Part shown: piece after piece, positions 22,725 through 28,625 of the stretch | How the letters are laid out: the number at the start of each line of letters is the position of its first letter | Numbering within the stretch: the stretch's first letter is position 1 | Assembly: GCA_044892505.1 (NCBI GenBank) | Contig: CM097883.1 | Span: forward strand, 262,818,001 to 262,882,000 | Source: Schmidtea nova | Taxonomy: Eukaryota | Direction of reading: 5' to 3' | Length of the DNA stretch: 64,000 bases | The notes under the pieces: generated by a model | Database searches by the model: none | What the model was told of the DNA's origin: nothing | Seen by the model: the letters and a program-made list of their open reading frames with translations, nothing else | Program-made: the position numbers and the translations under genes

Positions 22725-23170
22725 AACTGTGTACCCTCTCCGCCATAATTTTCATTAAAAAATCAGTTAAGTCTCTTCATGCTAAATCAATTGTAAATAG
22801 AGTATGAGGTAAAGCATATCCTTCGTAAATAGGAACTGTATGTAGTTACACCATCTCCAGTTGTTCTTAGAAAAGCAAAAAAACAGCACAGCTTGAAATG
22901 AGACAAAGATAGTTGAAGCATTGAAAGTTTCAAACATGAATGGAATCATCTTTTCTCTGTTGGCATAATGATTGATTAGAGCTCCAGTTAACAATAATTG
23001 ATGTTCTTCGGGAACTACTCTCAATCCATTGTAGAAAAAATGATGCCTGATCTTTTTCAAATCACCCCAATAAGTAACGATACCGTGTTCGATTGAATAT
23101 TTAAAAAAAAGAAATTTTCTTCTTATCCCATACCAACTTGATGTCGAGGTCGAACAACCATACCACAAAG
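22725..23170 (-). pseudogene. actin: Actin pseudogene fragment (N-terminal ~190 aa region)
   Basis: Across frames it reads [57 protein letters not shown] and [13 protein letters not shown]. Multiple frameshifts and stops. Confidence 0.9.
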
Positions 23171-26353: not shown

Positions 26354-26508
26354 GCTGACTATAGATCAAAAAATTTTTTTGTAAACAATAACACAATATT
26401 TCGGCACAGCCTTTATCAAGTGTGTATTTCACATAAAATGTATTTTCATCATAAGAAAAGATTTTGATCTATAGTCAGCATTATGAGAATTATTGATGAT
26501 AATAATAA
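26354..26508. repeat. Palindromic foldback MITE with an internally deleted right arm
   Basis: The left arm is nearly identical to the 9365 and 20175 copies. The right arm is reduced to TTTTGATCTATAGTCAGCATTATGAG. Flanked by N gaps. Confidence 0.8.
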
Positions 26509-26972
26509 NNNNNNNNNNNNNNNNNNNNNNNNNNNNNNNNNNNNNNNNNNNNNNNNNNNNNNNNNNNNNNNNNNNNNNNNNNNNNNNNNNNNNNNNNNNN
26601 NNNNNNNNNNNNNNNNNNNNNNNNNNNNNNNNNNNNNNNNNNNNNNNNNNNNNNNNNNNNNNNNNNNNNNNTCACAAGCTTTTTTTGTTTAAAACAAATA
26701 AGTCATCTGACAAATGTTTTTTTCAAAAGATATTTCAAGAAATTGAAATAATGAAGCTAAGGCAGTCGGGTGCGCTTGCAAACAGTTTCTGTTGAACACT
26801 TTTAGTGCGCAGAGGTGAAAATGAAATTCATACGCCATGTTTGCAAGTTACAGATTATCTGTTGGACCTTGCATATTCAAGGGATGTTTTATCCAGTGTA
26901 CCAGGTATAGTATATAACAAAAATCTTTCGACTCTGTTTTATACTTACCTGGCGCGGAGAGAAATTTTCGCG

Positions 26973-27028
26973 TCTCCTGCATAGCACTGATGAGAGCCAA
27001 AAGCTCGAAACTAGTCTGCTATTGGGGA
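26973..27028 (+). ncRNA. Type I hammerhead ribozyme (minimal, palindromic stem III)
   Basis: Stem I ATAGCA/TGCTAT, extended by TCTCC/GGGGA. Core CTGATGA. Stem II GAGC-CAAAA-GCTC, then GAAA. Stem III AC-TA-GT. Cleavage triplet GTC, with the predicted cut after 27016. Confidence 0.9.
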
Positions 27029-27114
27029 TTTGCACTGGGTATCACAAAAAAAATCCCAAGCTTTTTATTATTATTAATATTATTATTATTATTATTATTG
27101 ATTCGAGCCAAAAC

Positions 27115-27674
27115 CATTTGGAAGACATTTTTATTTTCCTCAAACAATGTTTCTATCAAAAGGCTAATAGTTCCATAACACAACTGGAGATCGTGCAAAG
27201 AAGCACGGGATTGATCAAATGTGTAGGCATTTCCTTTGACATTAGCAAGAGTGTCGAAACGATCAATTTCAGCAAAGAAGTCTCGATGAACCAGTGGTTG
27301 ACAGGCAGGAAATTCAAATCGGTGACGCGAATAAAATGTCTGACATTCGTGAAATCCTAAATATTTGCCGAATTTCAATATCGGCTTAAAACCATTTAAT
27401 AGAAAGGTTATGCCGCAGGTTTCTGTAATTATTCTCTTTGGTAACAAGAAGAAACTGCTTTCACTCCACACATAAGGATCCATATGATCATAGGACGTTT
27501 GTGCCATAATCTGGCGATTGACTTCATCAAGCATTTTAACGACGGAGACTTTAGGAATGGATCGAAATCACTCTCATTGTCATCAGAATTTAACCACATT
27601 TCTAATAGCTTTACACTGCCTTCAAAGAAATATTCCTGTGAAATATGATTGACCTGATTTCCCAAATCTTTCAT
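27115..27674 (-). pseudogene. AMD1: S-adenosylmethionine decarboxylase pseudogene (intronless, 3'-truncated)
   Basis: Reads YFFEGSVKLLEMW, (L)RSIPK, YVWSESS (autocleavage site), ITETCGITFLL, FYSRHRF..P..Q...HRDF and TISLLIETL. A 1-nt deletion lies near 27565, and homology ends at an (AAT)n tract. Confidence 0.85.
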
Positions 27675-27699
27675 AGCTCGGAAATGAAATCCAAAAATT

Positions 27700-28546
27700 C
27701 CAAAGCAATAATGGATATTCAAAATGTTTCTTGCAACGAATGGTGAGTGAAACTGTTGATAAGTGTATTAATAAGTTGAATGTGATTGATGAAAAAATTT
27801 CTCCTGGTGTTGATCCGTTTAATACCTCTGATAGTGCTCCTTTGATTGAAACAGGTGATGTTGTTATGGGAATGAATAATAATGAAATAAATAAAAGTAA
27901 CTTGAATGATTGCATTGGTTCTGTTATAGTTTTACCGTTTTCTGAGGGATTTGTAAATTTTAAAAAATTTATTATAAAATATATTGGAAATACTAATGTT
28001 AAAATAATTTCTAAGTCTTGCAAAGTTCGGGACATGTTCAGTAATAAATCTGTGACGCCATTTGGTCTGTGTTCTGATCTCGTATATCGTTTTACTTGTA
28101 ATGGGTGTAATGCCACATACATTGGAGAGACTGCCCGTCATCTCTGTACACGAGTTCAAGAACATGCCAGAAAGAGTGGAAAGAGTAACATTATTGAGCA
28201 TAATAAGACTTGCAAGAAGAGCATTGATATTTCTAATTTCAAAATACTTTCAAGGGGTTTTAAAAATTATTATGAACGTATGAATTGTGAGGCTTTGATG
28301 ATAAAATCATATTAATCCTAAAATAAATATACAAAATGCAATATCTACATGCATTTTGAGAGTGTTTAATTAATTTTATTAGGGTAAATAAAAGTTTTAT
28401 TGGATTATGCACATGTAATTATGTAATCACTATTAAGCGTATAATTAAGATCAATTTTTATTTTATTGAGATTGTGGAAAGCCTGATGATGACAGCTAAG
28501 CTGTTGAAATATATTGCATTAATATATTTAAAAAAATGGTGTTCTC

Positions 28547-28625
<79 letters not shown>

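What the first reader, a model, noticed from the sequence alone, without database searches (positions are those of the whole stretch)
26973..27028. Canonical type I hammerhead ribozyme with palindromic stem III, not adjacent to any autonomous ORF
Seen: every conserved core position is present (CUGAUGA, G10.1-C11.1, GAAA, GUC). Stem I is 6 bp plus an extension across an internal loop, and stem III is a 2-bp self-complementary ACUAGU. A (TAT)n tract follows about 40 nt later. Known: such minimal type I hammerheads occur in Penelope-like element pLTRs and metazoan retrozymes and often cleave as dimers. Inference: this may be a non-autonomous retrozyme/pLTR unit that landed in, and truncated, the AMD1 copy.
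Basis: partly seen in the sequence, partly recalled or inferred. Interest (0 to 1): 0.75.

Follow-up and report, generated by a model that had tools for sequence, protein, structure and literature searches.

The report
Hammerhead retrozyme copy, Penelope-style insertion
The self-cleaving hammerhead ribozyme motif is real, but it is one copy of a non-coding 382-base repeat present thousands of times in this genome and inserted the way Penelope-like retrotransposons insert, so it is an ordinary member of the published animal "retrozyme" class.

Summary
Window 26973-27028 (+) carries every conserved hammerhead core base, a 6+5 bp helix I, a 4 bp helix II and a palindromic ACUAGU helix III, with the predicted cut after C 27016. 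Rfam does not call it at curated thresholds; the best match is HH9 at 24.1 bits against a cut-off of 52.

It is not a lone element. It lies in a copy (26672-27066, running into a masked stretch on its 5' side) of a 382-bp non-coding repeat. The 30-nt core occurs 6,468 times in the genome at up to 3 mismatches, and 0 times in the reversed control. Copies are solo and 5'-truncated, in tandem arrays (at least 18 units) or in head-to-head pairs.

Copies end in two classes about 42 nt apart. In my sample, 24 of 30 ends abut (AT)n, (ATT)n or (AAT)n. A very abundant 2.7-kb Penelope-like element (PLE) of the same genome shows the same pattern, and a 5'-truncated copy lies 640 bp downstream.

Best reading: a non-LTR retrozyme mobilised by PLE machinery. 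Cleavage and circular RNA are inferred, because no RNA data were available.

The AMD1 inference fails. That fragment belongs to its own repeat family (at least 118 copies) and reaches the family's usual end.

The scan had already found this family on other DNA (s1-411042, s1-396006, s1-408929, s1-381105).

The parts
26672..27066 (+). Visible part of one copy of the 382-bp hammerhead repeat (non-LTR retrozyme). It covers unit positions 38-382 and then 1-50, counting 1 as the first base after the cut site. GC is 37%, there is no ORF, and it is about 98% identical to other copies. It is a 'short-end' (tail-less) copy.
   Evidence: blastn against other genomic copies; 3' end class; longest stop-free stretch 88 aa in a trimer of the unit
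26509..26671 (.). Masked stretch (N), which I did not fill. Homology to the repeat starts at the first unmasked base, so the 5' end of the copy lies somewhere in here. A second hammerhead, if present, would fall at about 26591-26646. Whether this locus has one or two ribozymes therefore cannot be told.
   Evidence: N map; unit arithmetic
26973..27028 (+). Type I hammerhead ribozyme motif: helix I of 6 bp plus a 5-bp extension, helix II of 4 bp with loop CAAAA, and a palindromic helix III, ACUAGU.
   Evidence: Sequence; full-length alignment to the Rfam HH9 model, below cut-off; pattern statistics; dimer energy
27016..27017 (+). Predicted self-cleavage site, 3' of C17. This is inferred and has not been assayed.
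   Evidence: Position relative to the conserved core
27067..27099 (.). (ATT)n microsatellite abutting the 3' end of the copy, which is the usual flank for this family.
   Evidence: 24 of 30 sampled family 3' ends are followed by at least 9 nt of (AT)n, (ATT)n or (AAT)n, against 1.4% of random 40-mers from the window
27100..27688 (-). Neighbour, not part of the element: a copy of a dispersed repeat that carries the N-terminal part of S-adenosylmethionine decarboxylase (AMD1). It is frameshifted and reaches the family's common end next to the microsatellite.
   Evidence: Pfam PF01536, E 1.5e-24; at least 118 genomic copies; about 83% identity to ten of them; shared end
27707..28554 (+). Neighbour and probable source of the machinery: a 5'-truncated copy (848 of 2,698 bp) of a very abundant Penelope-like element. 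It has a GIY-YIG reading frame at 27731-28315 and a short-class 3' end followed by (ATT)n at about 28550-28625.
   Evidence: 93-96% identity to full-length copies; GIY-YIG E 0.0029; RVT_1 E 5.9e-12 in a longer copy; family census; 3' ends
28482..28525 (+). Candidate Penelope-type minimal hammerhead in the element's 3' UTR. It reads CUGAUGA, one unpaired U, a 6-bp helix II (GACAGC/GCUGUU), GAAA, a palindromic AUAUAU, U17, and a 2-bp helix I. Confidence is low.
   Evidence: Read. It matches the traits described for PLE min-HHRs in PMC4209133, but no Rfam model matches it at E up to 10

Best explanation
The motif is the ribozyme of one copy of a 382-bp, non-coding, hammerhead-carrying retroelement (a non-LTR 'retrozyme').

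Shown here: the family is dispersed in thousands of copies. They have variable 5' truncation, partial or long tandem arrays and head-to-head twins. They have two alternative 3' ends about 42 nt apart, and they insert into AT-type microsatellites. This is the genomic signature of Penelope-like element (PLE) reverse transcription, and the genome's own very active 2.7-kb PLE shows it too.

Inferred mechanism: multimeric transcripts from tandem copies fold so that two neighbouring hammerheads pair through the palindromic ACUAGU into a double hammerhead. Each cuts after its GUC and releases a highly structured 382-nt RNA. A host RNA ligase may circularise it. A PLE reverse transcriptase/GIY-YIG endonuclease supplied in trans nicks ATT-rich DNA and starts cDNA synthesis at one of two internal sites 50 or about 92 nt past the cut site. 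That yields the tail-less and tailed copies.

The window's copy is a young, tail-less copy (about 98% identical to other copies) sitting in an (ATT)n tract. With only one visible ribozyme it could at most cut a read-through transcript once.
For: - Core and helices are intact, and the motif aligns end to end to Rfam HH9.
- Copy number: 4,442 exact and 6,468 near-exact (up to 3 mismatches) copies of the core, against 0 in the reversed control.
- Period of 382 bp by TRF. One array has 18 units in a row joined head to head to 5 more.
- In the first 29 Mb of contig 1 there are 52 loci: 36 solo, 9 tandem, 7 head-to-head and 0 tail-to-tail.
- 5' ends are scattered across the unit, while 3' ends cluster at unit positions 48-64 and 84-100. 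24 of 30 ends abut AT-type microsatellites, against 1.4% of random window 40-mers.
- The resident PLE has 19 short and 13 long 3' ends, with a tail of about 35 nt. 23 of 32 abut the same microsatellites. It also has tandem units of 2,698 bp, head-to-head pairs and open frames of 903 aa, and encodes RT followed by GIY-YIG.
- Published biochemistry: a PLE endonuclease prefers 5'-ATT-3', and its RT starts at two adjacent internal sites, which explains the 30-40 bp 'tail' (PMC11167929). PLE insertion features are described in PMC8557442.
- The retrozyme class is defined in PMC7229834. The canonical metazoan hammerhead (helix I 6 bp, helix II 4 bp, helix III 1-2 bp with a palindromic loop, active as a dimer) is described in PMC4209133.
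- The unit RNA folds to -121.5 kcal/mol, z = -6.56.
- The double hammerhead scores -34.2 kcal/mol. Two monomers score 2 x -14.4 with helices I and II only, or 2 x -8.7 with the single helix III pair.
Against: - There is no RNA evidence. The four runs that hold the sequence are of unknown kind and kept only as contigs, so transcription, cleavage and circles are all untested.
- Rfam's curated thresholds are not reached.
- No nucleotide similarity was found between the 382-bp unit and the resident PLE, including a locus that spans a whole PLE unit. The partnership therefore rests on shared insertion signatures only, and other PLE families were not examined.
- The predicted energy advantage of the dimer over two free monomer minimum-energy folds is small (-34.2 against -32.6 kcal/mol).
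- Long arrays could have grown by unequal crossing-over after insertion.
- Family copies were collected through their intact ribozyme core, so conservation of the core among them says nothing.
Confidence: 0.82

Rival explanations
1. A satellite DNA that carries a hammerhead, as first described in newts and cave crickets, and that spreads mainly by DNA-level processes (unequal crossing-over, segmental duplication). On this view retrotransposition plays no part and the ribozyme only trims its transcripts.
For: Long, very homogeneous arrays with an exact 382-bp period. No RNA or cDNA intermediate is shown.
Against: 36 of 52 sampled loci are solo copies scattered along the chromosome. 5' ends vary while 3' ends fall into two fixed classes. 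Inverted pairs are always head-to-head (7 against 0). 80% of ends abut AT-type microsatellites. These are marks of target-primed reverse transcription and are not expected from DNA-level array dynamics.
Confidence: 0.07
2. The unit is no separate element. It is a solo pseudo-LTR or terminal fragment of an autonomous PLE family whose coding part is usually lost by 5' truncation.
For: The hammerhead lies within 50-95 nt of the 3' end, where PLE terminal repeats carry theirs. A preprint finds animal retrozymes related to PLE terminal repeats (10.64898/2026.07.22.740005).
Against: Arrays repeat only the 382-bp unit, with no coding sequence between ribozymes. There is no ORF. There is no similarity to the abundant resident PLE across its whole 2,698-bp unit. 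That PLE's own 3' UTR has, at best, a different, minimal-type motif.
Confidence: 0.08
3. A host-domesticated regulatory hammerhead, like the conserved intronic HH9/HH10 ribozymes of amniotes, acting on a specific host transcript at this locus.
For: The best Rfam match is HH9.
Against: The score is far below the HH9 cut-off (24.1 against 52). The same sequence occurs thousands of times. The surrounding DNA is a patchwork of repeats (AMD1-fragment repeat, truncated PLE, microsatellites), and I saw no intact host gene around it.
Confidence: 0.02

Closest known systems
Metazoan non-LTR retrozymes (Cervera and de la Pena 2020, NAR, PMC7229834)
   Same: [quoted passage not shown] It is non-coding, has low GC (37%), ranges from dimers to large multimers, and lacks LTR, PBS and PPT. 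The unit is predicted to give a highly structured unit-length RNA.
   Different: The RNA (linear or circular) was not observed here. I found no paper describing this family, and its host looks like a planarian by an unchecked scan note. The window's own copy shows only one ribozyme.
Amphibian satellite-2 / axolotl HHR_Amex1 hammerheads and other canonical metazoan type I hammerheads that act as dimers (Forster 1988; PMC4209133; PMC7229834)
   Same: Helix I of 6 bp with an internal loop, helix II of 4 bp, and helix III reduced to one pair capped by a palindromic tetraloop. A stable helix III forms only between two copies.
   Different: The sequence differs, and cleavage as monomer or dimer was not measured here.
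Penelope-like elements and their insertion signature (Craig 2021, PMC8557442; Frangieh 2024, PMC11167929)
   Same: 5' truncation, partial tandems, an inverted 5'-truncated twin, an optional tail of about 35-45 nt at the 3' end, and ATT-rich or microsatellite targets. All of these are seen both in the 382-bp family and in the resident 2.7-kb PLE.
   Different: The 382-bp unit encodes nothing and shares no detectable sequence with that PLE. Its ribozyme is the canonical type with loop-bearing helices, and not the minimal PLE type.
Rfam RF02275 Hammerhead_HH9 (amniote intronic hammerhead)
   Same: Same overall architecture and a similar A-rich loop 2. It is the only Rfam model to align end to end.
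   Different: The score of 24.1 bits is below the 52-bit cut-off. Helix III is 5 nt shorter. This is a multicopy repeat and not a conserved single-copy intronic element.

Membership tests
Hammerhead ribozyme, type I | Conserved core: C3 U4 G5 A6 N7 G8 A9, G12 A13 A14, the A15.1-U16.1 pair, and H17 at the cut site | tested here: met
   All are present at 26987-26993, 27007-27010 and 27015-27016. The pattern is expected 0.00 times in shuffles.
Hammerhead ribozyme, type I | Three helices around the core, with helix I open-ended and G10.1-C11.1 closing helix II | tested here: met
   Helix I has 6+5 bp and helix II has 4 bp starting with G-C. Helix III has 1 bp as a monomer and 6 bp as a dimer. The double-hammerhead energy is -34.2 kcal/mol.
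Hammerhead ribozyme, type I | Score at or above the curated Rfam threshold for a hammerhead-clan model | tested here: not met
   No match at gathering score. The best is HH9 at 24.1 bits against 52. The short helix III costs most of the score. A genome-wide search with RF00163 was uninformative, because only 73 of 106,045 candidates were scored.
Hammerhead ribozyme, type I | Site-specific self-cleavage | not testable with these tools
   This needs in vitro transcription of monomer and dimer constructs.
Non-LTR retrozyme | Type I hammerhead embedded in short (150-450 bp) tandem repeats, from dimers to multimers | tested here: met
   Period 382 bp. Arrays of 2 to at least 18 units. For the window's own copy only one unit is visible, because of the mask.
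Non-LTR retrozyme | Non-coding, low GC | tested here: met
   GC is 37%. The longest stop-free stretch is 88 aa in a trimer of the unit.
Non-LTR retrozyme | Lacks LTR, PBS and PPT | not tested
   No PBS or PPT search was run. I saw no LTR in the loci compared, but that was not a dedicated test.
Non-LTR retrozyme | Expressed as unit-length linear and circular RNA | not testable with these tools
   No run on record as RNA holds it. The four holders are contigs of unknown library kind.
Elements mobilised by Penelope-like machinery | Variable 5' truncation with fixed 3' ends, partial tandems, and an inverted 5'-truncated twin | tested here: met
   7 head-to-head loci and 0 tail-to-tail among 52 loci.
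Elements mobilised by Penelope-like machinery | Optional 30-40 bp tail (two reverse-transcription start sites) and AT-rich or ATT targets | tested here: met
   3' ends fall at unit 48-64 and 84-100, and 24 of 30 abut AT-type microsatellites. The resident PLE shows the same: 19 short and 13 long ends, and 23 of 32 abut microsatellites.
Elements mobilised by Penelope-like machinery | Sequence relationship to a PLE terminal repeat | tested here: not met
   blastn (word size 7, E 1e-3) of the unit against 30 PLE loci, one of which covers a whole 2,698-bp unit, found only retrozyme copies that happened to lie nearby. Other PLE families were not examined.

The most novel reading that the evidence does not exclude
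A canonical-hammerhead retrozyme with no sequence similarity to any part of the co-resident, highly active PLE nevertheless carries that PLE's exact insertion fingerprint: two 3' end classes 35-45 nt apart, ATT/AT microsatellite targets, and head-to-head twins only. If the same enzyme made both, PLE reverse transcriptase would pick its template and its two internal start sites by something other than shared 3' sequence, such as RNA structure or U-rich tracts. This genome would then offer a natural pair for testing how PLEs choose templates and what the hammerhead contributes.
Probability: 0.5. Interest if true: 0.5.

Novelty: new member of a known kind. Interest (0 to 1): 0.3.

Why it matters
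For this locus, little: it is one dead-on-arrival copy among thousands, and the scan had already met the family elsewhere. For the field, modestly more. That animal retrozymes are mobilised by Penelope-like elements has been proposed (2020) and argued from phylogeny in vertebrates (a 2026 preprint). Here an invertebrate genome shows the retrozyme and a young PLE sharing the biochemically defined two-start-site 'tail' and the ATT-type target, without sharing sequence. That makes the partnership directly testable.

Tried and rejected
- **Rfam at curated thresholds on the whole window:** no match.
- **RF00163 across the whole genome:** uninformative, because only 73 of 106,045 candidates were scored and the controls were silent.
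- **Whole-genome DNA search with the 121-bp region:** it returned only 5 places because common words are skipped, so pattern counts were used instead.
- **Expression:** the only holders are four runs of unknown kind kept as contigs. They show that the repeat and the PLE are very abundant and that tandem junctions exist, but nothing about RNA, ends or circles.
- **Conservation or covariation of the ribozyme among diverged copies:** rejected as evidence, because every copy was collected through an exact match to the core. One unrelated locus (L095) has a hammerhead with two changed but still paired helix II positions. It is a single copy.
- **Similarity between the retrozyme unit and the PLE:** none found.
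- **Fetching a full tandem PLE pair:** A 655-aa partial frame from L062 was used instead.
- **Rfam on the PLE 3' UTR motif:** no hammerhead match at E up to 10, so it is kept only as a low-confidence candidate.
- **Paper PMC5785218 (dimeric PLE hammerheads):** not held.
- **Masked stretch 26509-26671:** I did not try to infer its letters.

Full report
**Observation.** The stretch 26973-27028 on the + strand reads as a complete type I hammerhead.
- CUGAUGA lies at 26987-26993.
- Helix II is 4 bp, GAGC/GCUC, closed by G10.1-C11.1, with loop CAAAA.
- GAAA lies at 27007-27010.
- The palindrome ACUAGU lies at 27010-27015, and C17 is at 27016.
- Helix I is AUAGCA/UGCUAU (6 bp), extended by UCUCC/GGGGA across an internal loop.

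As a monomer, helix III can be only the A15.1-U16.1 pair closing a CUAG tetraloop; the full 6 bp need a second copy. The core pattern is expected 0.00 times in shuffles of the window.

Rfam's curated thresholds give nothing in the window. A relaxed scan gives one hammerhead-clan match, RF02275 HH9, at 24.1 bits against a 52-bit cut-off. It aligns over the full model, with a 5-nt deletion in helix III. So the call rests on the invariant bases, the helices and the context, and not on a database threshold.

**The motif belongs to a large repeat family.**
- The window lies on contig 2 of a 1.25-Gb assembly.
- The core with a free helix II occurs 4,442 times in the genome. The exact 30-mer with up to 3 mismatches occurs 6,468 times. 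The reversed control gives 0 in both searches.
- Neighbouring hits are typically 380-383 bp apart, and TRF gives a 382-bp period.
- Among the first 100 hits, which fall in 52 loci over 29 Mb of contig 1, 36 loci are solo, 9 are tandem and 7 hold both orientations. All 7 of those are head-to-head, and none is tail-to-tail.
- One array has 18 units joined head to head to 5 more.
- The unit has 37% GC in a 27.5% GC window and has no ORF.
- As RNA it is strongly structured: -121.5 kcal/mol, z = -6.56. The antisense strand gives z = -5.49.

**Anatomy of the copies.** I numbered the unit from the first base after the cut site, using a natural copy (L001:1927-2308, minus strand).
- The 5' ends of 28 sampled loci are scattered over the whole unit, while 3' ends cluster at 48-64 and 84-100.
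- An apparent third class at position 32 is only a subfamily difference that breaks the alignment.
- Of 30 true ends, 24 are followed within 40 nt by at least 9 nt of (AT)n, (ATT)n or (AAT)n. The figure is 1.4% for random 40-mers from the window.
- The ribozyme therefore always sits 50-95 nt from the 3' end. The shortest copies are little more than ribozyme plus tail.

**The window's copy.** It spans 26672-27066, is about 98% identical to other copies, ends at unit position 50 and abuts (ATT)n at 27067-27099. It is a typical short-end copy.

On its 5' side, homology starts at the first base after a masked stretch (26509-26671). The real 5' end is therefore unknown, and so is the presence of a second ribozyme, which would lie at about 26591-26646. 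I did not try to recover those letters.

**Who moves it.** On the same strand, 640 bp downstream, lies a 5'-truncated copy (27707-28554) of a Penelope-like element (PLE).
- Longer copies encode a reverse transcriptase (RVT_1, E 5.9e-12). It is followed by the GIY-YIG-type endonuclease frame also seen in the window (27731-28315, E 0.0029, below Pfam's cut-off).
- The family is very young and abundant. At least 150 copies have 97-100% amino-acid identity, out of 28,175 first-look candidates. Many have open frames of 903 aa. There are tandem units of 2,698 bp and many head-to-head pairs.
- Its 3' ends also fall into two classes: 19 short and 13 carrying a tail of about 35 nt. 23 of 32 abut the same AT-type microsatellites.

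These traits are published hallmarks of PLEs: 5' truncation, partial tandems, an inverted 5'-truncated twin, an optional 30-40 bp tail and microsatellite bias (PMC8557442). In vitro work on an Anolis PLE traced the tail to two adjacent internal start sites of reverse transcription, and found that the endonuclease prefers 5'-ATT-3' (PMC11167929).

The 382-bp family reproduces each of these traits. I therefore read it as a non-autonomous element copied by PLE machinery.

The link is by signature only. blastn finds no similarity between the unit and the PLE, including a locus that spans a whole PLE unit. I could not survey other PLE families.

**How the ribozyme would work (inferred).** The architecture is the one described for canonical metazoan hammerheads: helix I 6 bp, helix II 4 bp, helix III 1-2 bp capped by a small palindromic loop. 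Such motifs are poor as monomers and active when two copies pair (PMC4209133; amphibian examples in PMC7229834). The nearest-neighbour energies are:

| Structure | kcal/mol |
|---|---|
| Double hammerhead (helix I in trans, 6-bp ACUAGU/ACUAGU helix III) | -34.2 |
| Monomer, helices I and II only | -14.4 |
| Monomer with the single helix III pair | -8.7 |
| Monomer minimum-energy fold | -16.3 |

The dimer's advantage over two monomer minimum-energy folds is real but small (-34.2 against -32.6).

The expected cycle follows the retrozyme model of PMC7229834: multimeric transcript, double cleavage, a 382-nt RNA, ligation by a host ligase, and reverse transcription by a PLE enzyme. None of the RNA steps could be tested. 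The only public runs that hold the sequence are of unknown library kind and kept as contigs.

**The AMD1 inference.** The reading frame on the minus strand at 27019-27534 matches S-adenosylmethionine decarboxylase (PF01536, E 1.5e-24, profile positions 39-149), with a frameshift near 27530.

It is not a gene hit by the retrozyme. The genome holds at least 118 such N-terminal fragments, out of 633 candidates. Nearly all start at profile position 2-3 (a few as late as 43) and end at 99-238 of 343. The window's copy is about 83% identical to ten of them.

Aligned with four copies that have no retrozyme nearby, it runs to the same terminal motif (..TTGGCTCGAAT, about 27100-27110). Beyond that point all the sequences diverge. 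So the fragment is complete for its family on that side.

The locus is best read as a patchwork:
- the retrozyme copy;
- (ATT)n;
- the AMD1-fragment repeat on the minus strand, cut short on its other side;
- the 5'-truncated PLE;
- (ATT)n again.

**Comparison and novelty.** The element fits the published non-LTR retrozyme class on every feature I could test, and its ribozyme fits the canonical dimer-type metazoan hammerhead. It fails two tests: Rfam's curated score, and sequence relatedness to a PLE terminal repeat. The latter was reported for vertebrate retrozymes in a 2026 preprint (10.64898/2026.07.22.740005).

I found no paper describing this family or hammerhead retrozymes in planarians. 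That the host is a planarian comes only from an unchecked scan note.

Earlier follow-ups of this scan reached the same reading on other pieces of this genome (s1-411042, s1-381105, s1-396006, s1-408929). I re-derived the tandem, head-to-head and microsatellite points on my own samples.

**Verdict.** This is a real ribozyme motif and a new member of a known kind, and this particular copy is ordinary. The most interesting residue is the parallel between the retrozyme's and the PLE's two 3' end classes despite no shared sequence.

Noticed in passing
window 27100-27688 (-); loci L066-L075: AMD1 (S-adenosylmethionine decarboxylase) N-terminal fragments form a dispersed repeat family: at least 118 scored copies from 633 candidates. 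Nearly all start at the N-terminus, they are 84-95% identical to each other, and they share a 3' terminal motif (..TTGGCTCGATT). Several have GCGTCTGTGTGCGC-like motifs just upstream. Some sit in open frames of about 400 aa. In at least one copy (L068) the protein match is interrupted by about 200 bp that the window's copy lacks. The kind of mobile element is unknown.
   Followed up: partly
window 27707-28554 (+); loci L036-L065: A very young, very abundant Penelope-like element. The tandem unit is 2,698 bp. Many copies have open frames of 903 aa, which is longer than one unit, so the frame runs across the unit junction. At least 150 copies have 97-100% amino-acid identity, out of 28,175 first-look candidates. 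Head-to-head pairs are frequent. There are two 3' end classes with a tail of about 35 nt.
   Followed up: partly
window 28482-28525 (+): Candidate Penelope-type minimal hammerhead in the PLE 3' UTR: CUGAUGA, an unpaired U, a 6-bp helix II ending in a G-U pair, GAAA, a palindromic AUAUAU, U17, and a 2-bp helix I. It fits the published description of PLE min-HHR variants, but no Rfam model matches it.
   Followed up: partly
L095 about 1250-1320 (contig 1, 17,214,076): A hammerhead with the same core and the same ACUAGU helix III, but a different helix II (GAUU/GAUC, two positions changed yet still paired) and flanks unrelated to the 382-bp unit. It may belong to a second hammerhead-carrying family.
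   Followed up: no
window 26354-26479: A small foldback or MITE-like element with 18-nt terminal inverted repeats (GCTGACTATAGATCAAAA...). It is followed by a short (TAA)n run that leads into the masked stretch. A related sequence lies just beyond the (ATT)n flank of another retrozyme copy, in L033.
   Followed up: no
L063 about 230-640: A retrozyme copy (+) and a PLE copy (-) face each other 3' end to 3' end across a single microsatellite of about 24 nt, as if both had used the same tract.
   Followed up: no
window 22782-23168 (-): An actin fragment (PF00022, E 1.5e-14, profile positions 56-134 of 410). It is another piece of a housekeeping gene in this repeat-rich stretch.
   Followed up: no
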